The translations under genes and the position numbers were made by a program. 64,000 bases of DNA from positions 36,084,001-36,148,000 of the forward strand of contig NC_088859.1 in the NCBI RefSeq assembly GCF_963853765.1. The letters run 5' to 3'. This document shows positions 39,172 to 50,234 of this stretch, in pieces; the stretch's first letter is position 1; every line of letters starts with the position of its first letter. The stretch is from Magallana gigas. Lineage: Eukaryota. Below the pieces are notes generated by a model, which worked only from the letters and a program-made list of their open reading frames with translations, did no database searches and was not told the origin of the DNA.

Positions 39172-42100
39172 TCACTCCTGGTGTGTGTCTGAGAACGCAG
39201 TATTTACGATGTATGTGGTCTTAGAATAGTCCGTATCCTCGTCCTCTACAGTATAAAGACCGTTTGAGTTTTTCTCCATCACAGGTTCCTTAGAAAAGTG
39301 TTCCTTGTCGAACCCATTCACCTGTTTGGGATCCTGTTTCAGCGTTCTTGATTGACGATGACTGGAAATCAAAGTTTAGGAAACCATAAGACATAAGACA
39401 GAAAATGAATACGTTGAGAAAAATCGTTTTGTTTTGATTGAGAAAAGTTTGATAATCAATTAAGTATACCTTCTTGCTCGCAGAGCCGTGATCAGAAGAG
39501 TGAGCAACAGAATCACTAAGGCTAGACACCCGATCCCTATCACTAAGTACACCCACCATTCCTGGGGACAGAAACAAGTTCTATAAACTCAATTTAAATA
39601 TTTCTGAATTTTCTGTTTAAGATTTTCAATACATGTAATCACCTATTAAGACGAAATCATTTATTGCTCCGCTAAAATTTAACATTTCCACCGCGAATGA
39701 TTTATAAACACGATATTGTGAAACGTGATCAGACAGAACATATTTGATCAGAACATGTGAAATCGGAAAAGTAAAACCTCACCGTTCCCTTTGGCTCAGA
39801 CTTTTTTGACGCTGAAGAATAAACACGTGATCCTGGCACTCGTTTTGACAATTCCTGTTCTAATTGAGCGGAAGTGGGCTCGTCCAAATCATCCTCGTCC
39901 ACTTCCTTCGGTCCAATTCGTGGTTTTATGAAGTATGTGTACATGCGGACATTCTCTCTGCAATGAAAACACTGTATGGCAAACATAATTTTCTAAAAGA
40001 CACGTTAATTATTGTCTTGTGGATATTATTAATTTACTTACCCGGATCCGGCAACATATCCGGCCTCTGAGTTGATGACGGACGTTGGAATAATTAGACC
40101 AAAACCTGAATAAGAAAAAAATGTATTTAAAGAGTTGCTAATAGAAAATATAGACAACAAAATGATCTGTAGAAGTTTGCAATGGCTACCGTCATTTGCC
40201 GCGACCCACGCATTTGATACGGATTCTTGAATGACCGTTGAGTTGAATTCCTTCATATCTTTTGTCCACAGCATCCTGACTTTGTAAGCTTTACAGTCGC
40301 AGTACTTAATCGGTGAAGACTTCATGGCGTCCTTGATAACACCGCCACTGGGCCGGGACAATGCTGCTACACTAGAGTCTGCGCTCAGGACACTTAAAGT
40401 GTACCTTAGTAGTGTGACTATTGTTCTATAAATTGGAAAACAGCACAGTCATTTTTTTACACTATTCATGATCATCAATAATACATGTAATGACTCTCTC
40501 TGAAAGTAACCATAAGTAAGAAATCATATATTTTTACCCTGTTGGGGAAACATAGTTTGTATTCCATAAGTGAATGGCAGCATTCAAATCCTTTTTAGAT
40601 ACATCTGAAATAGTTTCATATTCATTTAATATTAGAATCGACAAACAAATTGTGTGATATATTGAAAACAAATGGCTACTAGTAATGGAATTAAAATTTG
40701 ATTTTATACGTTTGTTGGTAGATGACCAAGCCTTCAAAATAATGTCTAATATCTTGGGCTTCTCTGAGTTTGGTATTATGTCTGTCAGTACAACTTCATG
40801 CAGCTCTCTTATCCTATTTACAGCTAGCTTCCGGTTGATGCTTCCCAGAGAGCTGTTGATGCGATCCAACATTCCACTCATATCCGGTCTTGGCCACGAG
40901 GTCTTTGTATCGTTAGGATTACTGGGTATGTAATACATTCTTGTCGCAATGGAACTTTAATGACAAAGATATTCAGTTATTGTAATGACATGCACATGGA
41001 AATAACTTTCTGATGAATCAAGCAAATTAAAAAATATTGAAGAGATTGACAGATCTTACTTTTTATTTCCTATAAAGGCAGATTTTTCCCAATGAGCATC
41101 GTCCGTTGCTGGAAATAAAACAAATTAAATCCAATGAAGTTTAGAATAAATATATATACAAGGAAAATAAAGAAGATGCTATAGAACAATTGGAAAAAGT
41201 AAATTCATACTCGCCTTGAATTGCTTTGATTTTATTTTTAATGTTGGTTTCATCTTTGAGCTTTATTCTCCCCGCTATATTAATAAAATGTCGTCTTGTA
41301 TATTTGCAGTTATCACAAATATCGTAAAATGCAGACATTCTTGATTTTAGTGCGTCCCACATTGTCGAGTCTGTGTTAAGATTTTGGTTTATTGACGGAT
41401 AAAAGACAACATCGGCTGACCTGTAAAATGAAATACTTATTAAGTAATTTAAATAATGAGAAATAAAGACAATTTCATCTTTATTTTTTTACCTTTGTTT
41501 TGCAGGTGTTAATTCAAGGGATGAGATCGTCATATCAACACCACAGCCAGACTGAGGACAGATCTTTTTATCTGCACAAAAGAGGAAACATTATCTAGAA
41601 TTCATCTATCGTTTTCAGCTGATACTTATGCCACAGTCACCAGTATACCTTTGATGACGTTTTTCCACGCTGTCAACGATTTATCCTGGAGTTCTGCCGC
41701 ATTCAGGGCAGTTGTTCGCTTCATTTGTTGCAGGGATAGTCGCAATCCGGATTCATATCCGTATCGCGTTTTCCCAGAATACATCAGTATCCGCCCGTCC
41801 GGAAATTCTCTGTGAAACTGGTCGTAAAATGCTGACTCCTGAGGAATGTTTTCCGTTTTCGGGTGTAACAGTTTCATTCCACTCGTAACCAGGTAAGTAA
41901 TATCAGTAATGTATATTCTGAAACGGAAAAGTTTAACTTATATAGTGGGATTCAAAAGTTAAAACTACTGTACCTGAATTGCAAGATTTAACGTTATGCT
42001 CGTTTTTTTTTAACAAAGAAAGAAATAAAGAAAGAAAATACCCGTATTGTCCAATTTGGTATGCAGCATCAACAATAAGAACGTCGACTTGCTTGTTTCC

Positions 42101-48100: not shown

Positions 48101-50234
48101 ACTTTGGTATTTGGCTGTAACTTTCAAACCGTAGTGAGTAACGTCTACAAGTATGGCATGCATATTTTACAATCAACGCTCTTCGAAAAGTATTTATATC
48201 AAAGAAATGTGTTCTTCCATTTGTCTTCAACAAATGTACTGTATCGTTACCGACTGTCATCTTTTGTCTACGATCTTACCTTTCTGTGCAAATAGCAAAT
48301 CAGACCTGTAATCATTTGAGTTTAAAATAAAAATATTATTTTTTTACATGTTATGTTTTAACCTCTTCGAAAGATTTTCAGATCTTAACGCAATTTAATT
48401 AAAGATTATACAGCATACTTTTCATAGTTTTACATAGTTTGGTATATTATAATAGTACTTGCTTCTTCTAATTACGGTATAACTGTACTAAACATTCATG
48501 TCCGTTCCCAAGAATCATACAATATATAAGAATACAATATGCTTACAAATACCCAATGGTAGATTTACAATAAACAGGGAAAATTTACCCGTTCCCATTG
48601 GTGGTCACGCATATGTTGATATCGTAATCACATCTGTCTGAGCTACACTTTCTGGAGGGCGGGCCGTCACAGCACTGTCCATTGTACAGCTCACTGTTAG
48701 TGTTGTTGTACTCCTTCAGGGTGATAAACAAAGTCGCCCGGGGGCTCTCCTGTGAAACAACATCACAAAAAGGCACACTTATAGAAAGATATGTATTGTT
48801 TACTAGTATACAGAAACAGAAAAAATTTTGACAAGCAAAAAAAACCGGAAATAAGACTTTCCAAAACTCTTCAAAATCCTAATCCGGGGAGGGGGGGGGG
48901 GGGGGGCGTAGTATATAACTTCAATTTCAATCCTAATTTCCTTCTTTTCATATCAATTTTTACATCCTCCAAAAAAAAAGTGGGGAGGGGGGGGGGGCAA
49001 CTCCATGTTAATTCAATTTTTTATATGTAAATTTTAAAAAAGTAGTTGCTGCGAGGAAAAGTGGGGGGGGGGGGCCAGGGCCGCCCTGCCCCCCCCCCTT
49101 GATGCTACGTGCCTGAGAAAATAAAAGTTTGAGCAACACAGCTTATCGGTGTATGATAATAATGATATCAAGTATTTTAACAATCTCGATATTCAGACTC
49201 CTTTGAGTCTTAAAAAAGTTGGGTGGGTGGGTGGGGGGGGGGGACCCCGATCAAATGTTCCAGTTTCACATACAATGTATTATAACCGTTCAGTCGTTTA
49301 ATTTGAAAAAACTAATAAACAAGTGATGAAACAAAGATAAGTCGGTTTTTGTGTGTGTGATGATGGTGGATTTTTAAAATCTTCACAAACCTAATTACAA
49401 AGGTAATGTATATGTATAACATTTAATATTCTTGTTTTTAAAGTAAAGAAACTTATAAATACATGTAACATTATTTTTTATTATGTTTAAAATGAGTATA
49501 ATTTTGTTTTCTTTCGCTGCGCATTAGAAATCGACATTATTCATATCAAAATCCTTCAAATATTTTGACATCATTAATATCAAAATATCTGTTTAAATTG
49601 TTCAACCAAGCAAGCACTGTCAGAACATTTACTATAATATGTCTGAGTTTGAATATTTACTCGACAATAATTAAGGTATACTCTCATTTTTTAATACAGA
49701 AGTTGGTTCGGTTAACATGCCGCATACTTCGGTTTCTAAATAAATCTCTTTATTTCGCCGACTTTTCCGAAATTAAAACGAGACCGTCGGACATTCAAAT
49801 ATCTCTGAATATCTTCCACAATTTACGTTCTCCTAGTTACAGAGTCATATGTATGTTATTTGGCATTTTTGTGATTTACCTTGCTCAAAGCAAAGAATTA
49901 AAAGAAAATTAACTTATATTTTTTTATGTTTGTTTAAATGCTTTTTTTCCAAACGGAGAGTACTAAAATATTGTTTTATAGCATTTTGAAATTTTAGTTC
50001 AAGATTTATCCCCTTCCCCCTCTCTCGTTTATTGAATAACATTCTTAAATGTTATTTAAATTTTTAAAAAAAATATTTATATATATAAAGATCAAAGGAA
50101 TTAAAATGATTGAAACATACATGTATTTTTACAAAATTAATGATAAAAATAATAAGATATCTTACCTGAGTTGAAATTCTAGAAACAATGCAAAGAAGAA
50201 TAAGAAATTCCAAAGCCATCCGCATGGCATCCAT
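39172..50234 (-). CDS. ~1,626-aa non-canonical Delta/Serrate-like (DSL) membrane protein: C2/MNNL, DSL, ~9-10 EGF repeats, Thr/Ser mucin tracts, six SEA-like modules, TM
   Basis: 21 phase-consistent exons (4881 nt): 50166-50234, 48589-48749, 47386-47482, 46865-47019, 46261-46451, 45852-46053, 43638-45598, 43359-43416, 42421-42677, 42042-42099, 41649-41917, 41493-41571, 41215-41420, 41060-41108, 40710-40954, 40538-40604, 40190-40425, 40042-40105, 39783-39957, 39470-39561, 39172-39361. MNNL: LKEYNN...NGQCCDG. DSL: CQTYYYGDQCSVFCIPSVDCKGHYSCDEKTGTKICDQGWEGEDC. cbEGF: DINECQSNPCQYGGTC. TM: WWVYLVIGIGCLALVILLLTLLITAL. Two introns need GC donors. Confidence 0.87.
46140..46223. mobile_element. 84-bp hAT-like micro-MITE with 8-bp TSD in the intron after the DSL exon
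   Basis: ctttgcgg|cacaggggccaagc ... gcttggcccctgtg|ctttgcgg; the interior is itself palindromic. Confidence 0.85.
48870..49115. repeat. G-run-rich interspersed repeat fragment, intronic
   Basis: Poly-G/poly-C runs ending ...cccccccttgatgctacgtgcctg, resembling the other G/C-run MITEs in the window. Confidence 0.45.

What the first reader, a model, noticed from the sequence alone, without database searches (positions are those of the whole stretch)
39172..50234. Notch-ligand head on a mucin stalk with six tandem SEA-like modules
Seen: canonical C2/MNNL-DSL-EGF N-terminus, then long Thr/Ser tracts between EGFs, then six ~85-110 aa alpha/beta modules. Each module is split the same way across a long exon and a 49-79 nt exon (phases 1 and 2), with a recurring strand-helix(AW/AI)-strand-TxIxY pattern. 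A TM and a short tail without an obvious PDZ motif follow. Known: Delta and Serrate lack such modules, and SEA-type domains act as cleavage or force-sensing units in mucins and the Notch NRR. Inference: a very long, possibly sheddable or mechanically buffered DSL protein acting as a long-range ligand, decoy or glycocalyx component.
Basis: partly seen in the sequence, partly recalled or inferred. Interest (0 to 1): 0.72.

Follow-up and report, generated by a model that had tools for sequence, protein, structure and literature searches.

The report
Oyster DSL-headed membrane mucin gene
This is one real, expressed Pacific-oyster gene that puts a Notch-ligand-type head on a long sugar-coated stalk with six small SEA-like domains next to the membrane. 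The combination is unstudied, is so far seen only in oysters, pearl oysters and mussels, and the head lacks the residues that normal Notch ligands use to grip Notch.

Summary
Window 50234-39172 (minus strand) holds one 21-exon gene, Crassostrea gigas LOC105326748, annotated only as "uncharacterized". It encodes a 1,626-aa type I membrane protein.

Its layout is: signal peptide, C2/MNNL, DSL, 3 EGFs, Thr/Ser tract, 6 EGFs, Thr/Ser tract, 1 degenerate EGF, Thr/Ser/Pro tract, six 93-112-aa modules, TM, 65-aa tail. RNA contigs from two studies give every splice junction from the big exon to the last exon. They confirm the repeated long-exon/short-exon unit (short exons 58, 58, 79, 49, 67, 64 nt, phase 1 in, phase 2 out).

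AlphaFold models of modules 2 and 6 show a beta-alpha-beta-beta-alpha-beta ferredoxin-type fold. Their best solved matches are SEA-like membrane-adjacent domains (PCDH15 MAD12 Z 8.8, then CELSR1, CDH23, GPR126 and MUC16 SEA). There is no Pfam SEA match and no conserved G|S autoproteolysis motif.

The DSL is the most conserved part. Its Notch-binding face is changed (Jagged-1 R201, R203, F207 become I, S, K), while four other oyster DSL loci keep it.

Orthologs occur only in oysters, Pinctada and Mytilus, and the genome holds no paralog. An in-frame 1,275-nt exitron shortens the stalk.

Verdict: a new architectural variant of known parts. Function is untested, and canonical Notch activation is doubtful.

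The parts
50166..50234 (-). Exon 1: start codon (50234) and 23-aa signal peptide
   Evidence: Open frame, GTAAGA donor. N-terminus identical to C. gigas XP_019922119.2.
48589..48749 (-). Exon 2: first part of the C2/MNNL domain
   Evidence: Pfam MNNL E 2.6e-7, 30.7 bits, cut-off 22.5.
47386..47482 (-). Exon 3: middle of C2/MNNL (33 codons), absent from my first model
   Evidence: It resolves the phase conflict between exons 2 and 4. The encoded peptide is present in RefSeq orthologs.
46865..47019 (-). Exon 4: last part of C2/MNNL
   Evidence: Splice consensus and phase. Aligns with Serrate C2 in 7alt_A.
46261..46451 (-). Exon 5: DSL domain (aa 169-215) with an extra Cys and Lys where Jagged-1 has F206-F207
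   Evidence: Pfam DSL 9.9e-15, profile 1-46/46. Whole-genome DSL hit at the same place. Alignments to Jag1, Jag2, Serrate and DLL1.
45852..46053 (-). Exon 6: EGF1, EGF2 and the start of EGF3
   Evidence: Pfam EGF and EGF_CA. The sixth Cys of EGF3 lies in exon 7.
43638..45598 (-). Exon 7 (1,961 nt): end of EGF3, Thr/Ser tract 1, six EGFs, tract 2, degenerate EGF, tract 3, then strand 1 and helix 1 of module 1
   Evidence: Single open frame. Pfam EGF x5. RNA contigs cover 43636-45099, and the junction 43416/43638 is seen.
43879..45153 (-). In-frame alternative intron inside exon 7 (exitron, 1,275 nt, aa 441-865). It removes the second EGF block, tract 2 and the degenerate EGF.
   Evidence: The loose end of the X1 contig at 43880 matches 45159 onwards, and a 271-nt contig of the same extent is in X2. 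RefSeq isoform X3 of C. gigas and C. angulata has the same junction. Contigs across 43879 show that the long form also exists.
43359..43416 (-). Exon 8 (58 nt): strand 2 of module 1; GC-AG intron follows
   Evidence: RNA junctions 43416/43638 and 42677/43359.
42421..42677 (-). Exon 9 (257 nt): rest of module 1, plus strand 1 and helix 1 of module 2
   Evidence: RNA junctions.
42042..42099 (-). Exon 10 (58 nt): strand 2 of module 2
   Evidence: RNA junction 42099/42421. The low end is inferred from X1 contig record 1 and the GT donor.
41649..41917 (-). Exon 11 (269 nt): rest of module 2, plus the start of module 3
   Evidence: X1 contig of 1,689 nt. This was the query that found the orthologs.
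41493..41571 (-). Exon 12 (79 nt): strand 2 of module 3
   Evidence: RNA junctions.
41215..41420 (-). Exon 13 (206 nt): rest of module 3, plus the start of module 4; GC-AG intron follows
   Evidence: RNA junctions.
41060..41108 (-). Exon 14 (49 nt): strand 2 of module 4
   Evidence: RNA junctions.
40710..40954 (-). Exon 15 (245 nt): rest of module 4, plus the start of module 5
   Evidence: RNA junctions.
40538..40604 (-). Exon 16 (67 nt): strand 2 of module 5
   Evidence: RNA junctions.
40190..40425 (-). Exon 17 (236 nt): rest of module 5, plus the start of module 6
   Evidence: RNA junctions.
40042..40105 (-). Exon 18 (64 nt): strand 2 of module 6
   Evidence: RNA junctions.
39783..39957 (-). 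Exon 19 (175 nt): rest of module 6 (the membrane-proximal one and the best conserved module)
   Evidence: RNA junctions. Local pLDDT 80-92. Identity 0.80/0.74 to C. virginica / S. cucullata.
39470..39561 (-). Exon 20: transmembrane helix (aa 1534-1561)
   Evidence: Hydrophobic stretch; RNA junctions.
39172..39361 (-). Exon 21: conserved cytoplasmic tail and stop codon (39174-39172)
   Evidence: X2 contig of 918 nt spans 40425 to 39100. Tail identity 0.82-0.86 among oyster genera, and its core motifs are shared with Pinctada and Mytilus.

Best explanation
Shown: this is the single-copy C. gigas gene LOC105326748. It encodes a type I membrane glycoprotein built from two known kinds of parts.
- The tip is a C2/MNNL-DSL-EGF head of the Delta/Serrate type.
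- The body has the layout of a membrane mucin: three Thr/Ser-rich tracts interleaved with ten EGF-like modules, then six tandem ferredoxin-fold (SEA-like) modules ending at the membrane.
- A TM helix and a strongly conserved 65-aa tail follow.
- An in-frame exitron switches between a long (1,626 aa) and a short (about 1,201 aa) stalk.

Inferred mechanism: the glycosylated tracts, EGFs and SEA-like array form a stiff, extended stalk, very roughly 80-130 nm by rule of thumb. It holds the DSL head far above the cell surface. The head is the part under the tightest constraint, so it binds a specific partner.

Three of the five face residues of canonical ligands are changed, including the essential Phe, and an extra Cys pair (one in the DSL, one in EGF1) is added. 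I therefore think it most likely engages Notch-type EGF repeats non-canonically. That would make it an adhesive, modulatory or cis-inhibitory ligand rather than a classical endocytosis-driven activator.

The SEA-like modules lack the autoproteolysis motif. They would act as uncleaved spacers or mechanical elements, not as self-cleaving shedding sites. The conserved tail (SRTLKQ, NG[FY]DKEHFS, an NxxY-type Tyr and an acidic cluster) would link the protein to sorting or signalling machinery.
For: - Gene model and splicing.
- Identity with C. gigas XP_019922119.2 at 95-100% per domain.
- Head domains: Pfam MNNL and DSL above cut-off; alignment to Jagged-1/2, Serrate and DLL1 structures.
- Altered DSL face: FCIPSVDCKGHY here against FCRPR[DN]DxFGHY in four other DSL loci of the same genome and in solved ligands. 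Jagged-1 F207A abolishes Notch-1 binding and activation (PMC3888931).
- Module fold: M2 model has pLDDT 84.6 and pTM 0.79 with b-a-b-b-a-b order. Best matches are PCDH15 MAD12 at Z 8.8/8.6/8.3 (94-95 aligned, rmsd 3.4-3.8), CELSR1 7.4, CDH23 MAD28 7.2, GPR126 SEA 6.3, MUC16 SEA 5.7-5.8 and dystroglycan 5.8.
- M6, modelled independently, hits the same class at Z 5-6.4. AFDB hits fall in the KIAA1549 SEA-like region, PCDH15 and the MUC13 SEA.
- PCDH15, CDH23, dystroglycan, IA-2 and the Notch HD are treated as SEA-like in PMC6586460.
- No G|S motif and no furin site.
- Conservation ranking, C. virginica / S. cucullata: DSL 0.91/0.89, tail 0.82/0.86, M6 0.80/0.74, mucin tracts 0.33-0.54.
- Exitron.
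- Orthologs in Crassostrea, Saccostrea, Pinctada and Mytilus only; no paralog in the genome.
Against: - No binding, glycosylation, cleavage or localisation data exist for this protein, and no paper mentions the locus.
- Loss of the Phe does not prove loss of Notch binding. The C2 and EGF1-3 contact sites were not analysed. From my own recollection, unchecked here, some nematode DSL ligands also have divergent DSL faces.
- SEA-like is a fold-level call. Z 8.8 is only at the upper edge of what unrelated models reach in this search (note). Foldseek against the PDB gave nothing below E 0.03. No Pfam SEA hit.
- Only M2 and M6 were modelled with confidence. The whole-array model had mean pLDDT 45.
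- The Thr/Ser tracts are short (70-120 aa) and not VNTR-like, so 'mucin' is used in a loose sense.
- The head-to-body junctions were not seen in laid reads.
Confidence: 0.55

Rival explanations
1. It is a bona fide activating Notch ligand. The long, splice-adjustable stalk lets it reach Notch on distant or non-adjacent cells, or through a thick glycocalyx or mucus layer. The tail recruits the endocytic pulling machinery.
For: - A complete C2/MNNL-DSL-EGF head in the order of all active ligands.
- The DSL is the most conserved domain.
- F199 and D205 equivalents and the GHY core are kept.
- Several Lys in a conserved tail.
- Two stalk lengths through the exitron.
Against: - The equivalents of R201, R203 and F207 are I, S and K in oysters (Asp in Pinctada). 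Four other DSL loci in the same genome keep them.
- F207A ablates binding in Jagged-1 (PMC3888931).
- No match above cut-off to the atypical Jagged EGF2 (16.7 bits against 27).
- Six ferredoxin-type domains in series could yield under load. The nearest structural match, MAD12, unfolds first in pulling simulations (PMC7547225).
Confidence: 0.2
2. It has nothing to do with Notch. It is a barrier or glycocalyx membrane mucin of bivalve epithelia, and its DSL head has been co-opted as a generic adhesion or microbe-binding tip.
For: - Body layout equals that of membrane mucins and KIAA1549: O-glycan-type tracts, EGFs, SEA-like domains, TM and a signalling tail (PMC13570299).
- The canonical Notch face is lost.
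- DSL domains are widely expanded and shuffled in bivalves (PMC8166818).
- The family is restricted to pteriomorph bivalves.
Against: - A head used only as a generic tip would not be expected to be the most conserved part (0.89-0.91).
- The Thr/Ser tracts are short for a barrier mucin and lack tandem repeats.
- The gene is single-copy with stable architecture, unlike fast-evolving defence mucins.
Confidence: 0.17
3. It is itself a force-gated receptor. Pulling on the DSL head unfolds the membrane-proximal SEA-like module and exposes a metalloprotease site. Intramembrane cleavage then releases the conserved tail as a signal, as in the Notch NRR.
For: - M6, the TM and the tail are conserved together (0.80, 0.89, 0.82 to C. 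virginica).
- SEA-like domains with a structured N-terminal neighbour (PCDH15, CDHR2, dystroglycan) can replace the Notch NRR as contact-dependent proteolytic switches (PMC6586460).
- The Notch2 NRR HD appears among the M6 matches at Z 4.6.
Against: There is no direct evidence of cleavage. The tail has no recognisable nuclear-targeting or transcription-related domain (one search gave only sub-threshold matches driven by the TM). The Z-scores are modest.
Confidence: 0.06
4. The architecture is a gene-model artefact: two neighbouring genes (a small DSL-EGF gene and a mucin/SEA-like gene) have been joined.
For: The five head junctions were not covered by the one laid stretch. A Pinctada model of this family is visibly fused to its neighbour.
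Against: - EGF3 is only complete across the exon 6/7 junction.
- All phases fit and give one open frame.
- RefSeq models in C. gigas, C. angulata and S. cucullata carry signal peptide, head and body together, and the N-terminally truncated C. virginica and S. echinata models still carry DSL and body together.
- RNA runs hold about the exon share of the whole 39172-46500 stretch.
Confidence: 0.02

Closest known systems
Delta/Serrate/Jagged (DSL) Notch ligands
   Same: Signal peptide, C2/MNNL, DSL, EGF repeats, single TM and a short tail. The head aligns with the Jagged-1/2, Serrate and DLL1 structures. The best PDB E-values are to Jagged and Serrate.
   Different: - The DSL binding face is altered (I, S, K for R201, R203, F207).
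- There is an extra Cys in the DSL and in EGF1.
- There is no VWC domain and no above-threshold atypical EGF2.
- Thr/Ser tracts and six SEA-like modules are inserted between the EGFs and the TM.
- There is no PDZ motif.
- It is not orthologous to the canonical oyster loci.
Membrane mucins with SEA and EGF domains (MUC3/12/13/17; MUC16 with tandem SEA)
   Same: Type I membrane protein with Ser/Thr-rich tracts, EGF-like modules and juxtamembrane SEA-type folds. MUC16 and MUC13 SEA domains are among the structural matches.
   Different: - No Pfam SEA match and no G|SVVV autoproteolysis motif.
- The tracts are short and not tandem-repeated.
- No known mucin carries a C2-DSL head (from my own knowledge).
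KIAA1549 (UPF0606)
   Same: A large O-glycosylated ectodomain, a Ser/Thr-rich region, three tandem SEA-like domains, TM and a cytosolic tail (PMC13570299). Its SEA-like region is hit by the M2 model.
   Different: KIAA1549 is O-mannosylated and furin-cleaved in its last SEA-like domain. Here there is no furin site, there are six modules instead of three, and the N-terminus is a DSL head.
Membrane-adjacent domains (MAD) of PCDH15, CDH23 and CELSR
   Same: They are the best structural matches to M2 and M6 (Z 8.8-7.2 and 6.4-5.4). They are ferredoxin-like, extracellular and next to the membrane (PMC7547225).
   Different: A MAD is a single copy preceded by cadherin repeats. Here there are six in tandem, preceded by a Thr/Ser tract. 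Sequence identity is 6-8%, so homology is not shown.
Bivalve DSL-family expansion (Sci Rep 2021, PMC8166818)
   Same: That survey reports 138 lophotrochozoan DSL genes. They include a branch with 'DSL, EGF and other domains', and rapid divergence. This gene fits that branch.
   Different: In the passages I read, the paper does not describe the SEA-like array, the Thr/Ser tracts or this locus. No paper holds the locus identifiers.

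Membership tests
DSL Notch ligands (Delta/Serrate/Jagged) | Type I membrane protein with an N-terminal signal peptide | tested here: met
   23-aa signal peptide and a TM at aa 1534-1561.
DSL Notch ligands (Delta/Serrate/Jagged) | C2/MNNL domain (PF07657) at the N-terminus | tested here: met
   30.7 bits against a cut-off of 22.5 on exon 2. Aligns with Serrate residues 7-208. The later MNNL exons alone gave no Pfam hit.
DSL Notch ligands (Delta/Serrate/Jagged) | DSL domain (PF01414) followed by EGF repeats | tested here: met
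   55 bits, full profile. EGF and EGF_CA follow directly.
DSL Notch ligands (Delta/Serrate/Jagged) | [quoted passage not shown] | tested here: not met
   Only the F199 and D205 equivalents are kept. R201, R203 and F207 become I, S and K. All orthologs share this (Pinctada has Asp). Four other DSL loci of the same genome keep the RPR[DN]DxF motif.
DSL Notch ligands (Delta/Serrate/Jagged) | Atypical first EGFs (DOS-type / JAG1-like EGF2) | tested here: inconclusive
   PF21795 scores 16.7 bits against a cut-off of 27. EGF1 here is a regular EGF with a CCC triplet.
DSL Notch ligands (Delta/Serrate/Jagged) | Binds and activates Notch; tail is ubiquitylated by Mind bomb or Neuralized | not testable with these tools
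   No oyster Notch sequence was available as a contiguous reference for a complex prediction. The tail has Lys residues but no motif that I could verify.
SEA domain (PF01390) | Match to the Pfam SEA profile | tested here: not met
   No SEA hit for exon pieces, for a full ortholog at E up to 1, or for any of 26 complete modules at E up to 10. A profile search of PDB sequences found nothing.
SEA domain (PF01390) | Beta-alpha-beta-beta-alpha-beta alpha/beta sandwich resembling solved SEA or SEA-like domains | tested here: met
   M2 has pLDDT 84.6. SEA-like MAD12 scores Z 8.8, and GPR126, MUC16, TMPRSS6 and TMPRSS11D SEA domains score Z 4.9-6.3. M6 gives the same class at Z 4.6-6.4. The scores are moderate, so this is a fold-level call only. 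M1, M3, M4 and M5 rest on secondary-structure patterns from a low-confidence model.
SEA domain (PF01390) | G|S[VI]VV autoproteolysis site between strands 2 and 3 | tested here: not met
   The only candidate is G-T-I-V in M5 of this allele. It reads G-E-P-V or G-E-T-V in C. virginica and Saccostrea.
SEA domain (PF01390) | Extracellular, beside O-glycan-rich sequence, often juxtamembrane | tested here: met
   The array lies between Thr/Ser/Pro tract 3 and the TM.
Membrane mucins | Long Pro/Thr/Ser domain, usually tandem-repeated and densely O-glycosylated | tested here: inconclusive
   Three tracts of 70-120 aa with S+T of 0.50-0.66. Only short degenerate DNA repeats are present. Glycosylation is not testable here.
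Cadherin-type membrane-adjacent domain (MAD) | Single ferredoxin-like domain between the last cadherin repeat and the TM | tested here: not met
   The fold matches best, but there are no cadherin repeats and six copies instead of one.

The most novel reading that the evidence does not exclude
The protein is a ligand with its own force-gated switch. The DSL head engages Notch or a Notch-like EGF protein on another cell. Tension then unfolds the membrane-proximal SEA-like module(s), which permits shedding and intramembrane release of the highly conserved tail. The ligand side would thus carry an NRR-like mechano-proteolytic unit, and alternative splicing of the stalk would set its reach.
Probability: 0.08. 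Interest if true: 0.85.

Novelty: new variant of a known kind. Interest (0 to 1): 0.52.

Why it matters
Notch ligands are among the most architecturally conserved signalling proteins in animals. Here a C2-DSL-EGF head is welded to a mucin-type stalk and to an array of SEA-like domains, the fold that gates proteolysis in Notch itself and in mucins. The architecture is conserved in four oyster species of two genera, and its module array, TM and tail also in Pinctada and Mytilus. This gives a natural experiment on three questions:
- How far a DSL head can sit from the membrane.
- Whether the canonical Phe/Arg face is needed.
- Whether ferredoxin-type juxtamembrane domains buffer or transduce force on the ligand side.

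It also adds six sequence-orphan members to the growing class of divergent SEA-like domains, and it assigns a structure to an 'uncharacterized' oyster locus.

The limits are plain. Bivalves shuffle DSL and EGF domains freely, the family is lineage-restricted, and nothing is known of its function.

Tried and rejected
- My first 20-exon model left a phase conflict between exons 2 and 4 and a short MNNL. It was replaced by the 21-exon model.
- Pfam on module exon pieces, on a full ortholog and on 26 whole modules gave no family.
- A profile of 26 modules against PDB sequences returned only chance hits at E above 1.
- Foldseek against the PDB found nothing below E 0.03. The hits were generic ferredoxin folds, with MUC16 SEA at rank 9. 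AFDB clusters and the ESM Atlas were not decisive.
- AF2 of the whole six-module array with 7 rows gave mean pLDDT 45. Only M6 was usable.
- hhalign between modules was weak. I do not claim sequence-level repeat homology for all pairs.
- SEA autoproteolysis and furin processing are rejected for lack of conserved motifs.
- The Cadherin_C_2 and TMEM132_C matches to the TM/juxtamembrane region recur in five of six orthologs (E about 2e-4 to 5e-4). They stay below cut-off (21-22.5 bits against 31.5) and cover the TM helix, so I treat them as hydrophobic-segment matches.
- P0005, a bacterial repeat protein found with the module query at E 2e-4, was rejected as spurious.
- A head-only homology search found only orthologs, so no DSL phylogeny was attempted. 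A 45-aa DSL tree would not resolve the origin.
- Literature searches for all locus identifiers gave no hits.
- Complex prediction was not used. No contiguous oyster Notch EGF8-13 reference was available.

Full report
**What is there**

The finding lies on the minus strand. Six-frame reading showed a signal-peptide exon at 50234 and MNNL-, DSL- and EGF-like pieces. It also showed a 2-kb open exon (45598-43638) and a string of shorter open segments down to a stop at 39174-39172.

One public-run search found 19 runs from 9 studies holding the stretch. The RNA-labelled runs held 0.46-0.54 of its words, which is about the exon share.

I laid contigs of three runs and raw reads of a fourth on 39100-45099. 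This gave 13 minus-strand junctions (CT..AC, two of them CT..GC), each seen in X1 and/or X2, which come from different studies. Contigs of 1,689 and 918 nt chain many exons. After placing each cut on its GT/GC-AG, the exons translate without a stop.

A phase conflict between exons 2 and 4 exposed one more head exon (47482-47386). The final model has 21 exons, 4,881 nt and 1,626 aa.

The five head junctions were not under the laid stretch. They rest on three things:
- consensus splice sites and consistent phases;
- EGF3, whose sixth Cys lies across the exon 6/7 junction;
- RefSeq models that contain head and body together.

**Identity**

A module exon searched against 1.84 billion representative proteins found only four real hits, one of them a 1,466-aa Saccostrea protein.

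Searches from that protein, and from the Pinctada protein it recovered, found relatives in S. cucullata, C. angulata, C. virginica, Pinctada imbricata and Mytilus galloprovincialis. The Pinctada model is fused to its neighbour. The Mytilus model has modules, TM and tail but a truncated N-terminus.

The cluster of the C. angulata protein contains C. gigas XP_019922119.2, 'uncharacterized protein LOC105326748 isoform X3'. My model is 95-100% identical to it, domain by domain, so the window is C. gigas.

The genome holds no paralog of the module/tail region. No paper in the library mentions any of the locus identifiers.

**Layout (aa)**

| Region | Residues |
|---|---|
| Signal peptide | 1-23 |
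| C2/MNNL | about 24-165 |
| DSL | 169-215 |
| EGF1-3 | 222-336 |
| Thr/Ser tract 1 | 337-440 |
| Six EGF-like modules | 441-686 |
| Tract 2 | 687-806 |
| Degenerate EGF | 807-845 |
| Tract 3 (S/T 0.50, P 0.18) | 846-915 |
| Modules M1-M6 | 916-1533 |
| TM | 1534-1561 |
| Tail | 1562-1626 |

The tracts carry only short degenerate DNA repeats.

A loose contig end at 43880 matches 45159 onwards. It defines an in-frame 1,275-nt exitron (45153-43879, GT-AG) that deletes aa 441-865. RefSeq isoform X3 has exactly this junction. Other contigs run through the acceptor, so both stalk lengths are present in RNA.

**The head**

Pfam MNNL and DSL are above cut-off. The head aligns with the solved Jagged-1/2, Serrate, DLL1, DLL4 and Delta N-termini, best with Jagged and Serrate.

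The stretch that reads FCRPRDD(F/A/Q)FGHY in those ligands reads FCIPSVDCKGHY here. In Jagged-1 numbering, which I recall from memory, F199 and D205 are kept. R201, R203 and F207 become I, S and K, and F206 becomes an extra Cys. F207A abolishes Notch-1 binding and activation (PMC3888931).

All oyster orthologs share the change, and Pinctada has Asp at the Phe position. As an internal control I pulled the other strong DSL loci of this genome. Four keep RPR[DN]DxFGHY or RHRNDNFGHY, and one other (C7:12.71 Mb) also has the extra Cys.

EGF1 also has an odd seventh Cys (a CCC triplet) that is conserved in all orthologs. An extra DSL-EGF1 disulfide is therefore plausible but untested.

The DSL is nevertheless the most conserved domain: 0.91 to C. 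virginica and 0.89 to S. cucullata.

**The modules**

Each module is encoded by three pieces:
- the 3' end of a long exon (strand 1, helix 1);
- a short exon (strand 2);
- the 5' part of the next long exon (strand 3, helix 2, strand 4).

The introns fall at the helix 1/strand 2 boundary (phase 1) and the strand 2/strand 3 boundary (phase 2), six times over.

Sequence similarity between modules is faint (10-23% identity; hhalign E 0.003-0.03 for M1-M2, M1-M5, M2-M5 and M5-M6 only). No Pfam family, SEA included, matches any module, and neither does any PDB sequence.

AlphaFold2 of M2 with a 26-row module alignment gave pLDDT 84.6 and pTM 0.79, with b-a-b-b-a-b order. Foldseek against the PDB found only weak, generic ferredoxin-fold hits.

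The exhaustive aligner behaved differently. It put one class on top:

| Match | Z |
|---|---|
| PCDH15 MAD12 | 8.8, 8.6, 8.3 |
| CELSR1 | 7.4 |
| a nuclear-pore chain | 7.3 |
| CDH23 MAD28 | 7.2 |
| GPR126 SEA | 6.3 |
| MUC16 SEA | 5.7-5.8 |
| dystroglycan | 5.8 |
| TMPRSS6 SEA | 5.4 |

Generic ferredoxin folds such as ribosomal S6 and PheRS came at about Z 5.

The whole-array model was poor (mean pLDDT 45). It did model M6 at pLDDT 80-92, and it gave the same secondary-structure order for M3 and M5. M6 again matched PCDH15 MAD12 (6.4), GPR126 SEA (6.0), IA-2 (5.5), CELSR1, MUC16 SEA, dystroglycan, TROP2 and the Notch2 NRR (4.6).

AFDB hits include the SEA-like region of KIAA1549, PCDH15 and the MUC13 SEA. 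PMC6586460 treats exactly these proteins as the SEA/SEA-like class, and PMC7547225 calls MAD12 ferredoxin-like.

I conclude that the modules are SEA-like at the fold level. Z values of this size do not prove homology (see the tool's own note).

No module has a conserved G|S[VI]VV site, and there is no R-x-[KR]-R site in the protein.

**Tail**

The tail is 0.82-0.86 identical between oyster genera. Its core motifs (SRTLKQ, NG[FY]DKEHFS and an N-x-x-Y) are shared with Pinctada and Mytilus. It has no class I PDZ end. Sub-threshold Cadherin_C_2 matches cover the TM helix, and I do not trust them.

**Reading**

Shown:
- one expressed gene;
- the domain order;
- the repeated exon unit;
- the fold of M2 and M6;
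- the altered DSL face;
- two splice forms;
- a pteriomorph-restricted, single-copy family.

Inferred: an extended glycosylated stalk presents a constrained but non-canonical DSL head. The SEA-like modules act as uncleaved spacers or mechanical elements. The conserved tail couples to sorting or signalling.

I rank the readings as follows:
- a non-canonical Notch-type interaction (adhesive, modulatory or cis-inhibitory) as most likely;
- then a true long-reach activating ligand;
- then a Notch-independent barrier mucin;
- then a force-gated receptor.

A fused-gene artefact is very unlikely.

**Comparison and novelty**

The head belongs to the DSL-ligand kind but fails the binding-face test. The body works like a membrane mucin or KIAA1549 (PMC13570299) but fails the Pfam SEA and autoproteolysis tests.

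The bivalve DSL expansion is published (PMC8166818). In the passages I read, that paper does not describe this locus, its SEA-like array or its Thr/Ser tracts. I therefore class it as a new variant of known kinds.

Noticed in passing
window 40924-42159, and 42300-43500, plus strand: Run X2 shows two plus-strand GT..AG junctions (40924/41505 and 41890/42159), with short sides of 23-27 nt. A loose end in X7 supports the first one (its best match is 41508, 25 of 27 letters). In the raw-read run X20 the first mates lie on the opposite strand over 42300-43500 compared with 39100-41900, though only 22 reads were laid. Together these hint at a spliced antisense RNA over the module exons. The first junction would also remove exactly 297 coding nt (99 codons) from the sense mRNA, which could be chance or a deletion allele.
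   Followed up: partly
window 41109-41214 and 42678-43358: Two of the RNA-supported introns use GC-AG rather than GT-AG. The older C. gigas model P0010 has a 7-residue insertion at the exon 13/14 junction, which is what read-through past the first GC donor to a downstream splice donor would give.
   Followed up: partly
window 21813-37301 (neighbour gene) and P0009: The Pinctada imbricata model P0009 continues past the conserved tail, with the last tail residues missing, into a large protein with PAN/apple domains (PF00024). The two genes therefore seem to be neighbours in both oysters and pearl oysters, and the Pinctada model is a fusion artefact.
   Followed up: partly
G000:C7:12713305-12713490 (L010): Another DSL locus on the same chromosome also has an extra Cys just before the GHY core (reading ..FGCNGHY) and lacks the Arg-Pro-Arg. 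It may be the nearest DSL relative of this gene, but it has a different body, since no module or tail paralog exists.
   Followed up: no
G000:C4:35621578-35645518 and G000:C7:50595032-50597668: There are long open frames packed with tandem DSL domains (frames of 980, 1,304 and 2,593 aa). These are the bivalve-specific DSL tandem arrays mentioned in PMC8166818.
   Followed up: no
window 42808-43293 (inside the 681-nt GC-AG intron): Low-depth RNA-run contigs (X1 at depth 4, X2 at depth 12) lie wholly inside this intron. They could be unspliced pre-mRNA, part of the possible antisense RNA, or a repeat.
   Followed up: no
window 42213 and 47432: A contig of run X7 (organism B) ends at 42213, in an intron, with 27 loose letters that match 47432-47458 inside head exon 3. 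It is not at a splice site. It may be a chimeric contig or a rearranged allele.
   Followed up: no
window 21643-21772 and 52245-52377: Two runs of N (130 and 133 bases) lie outside the gene.
   Followed up: no
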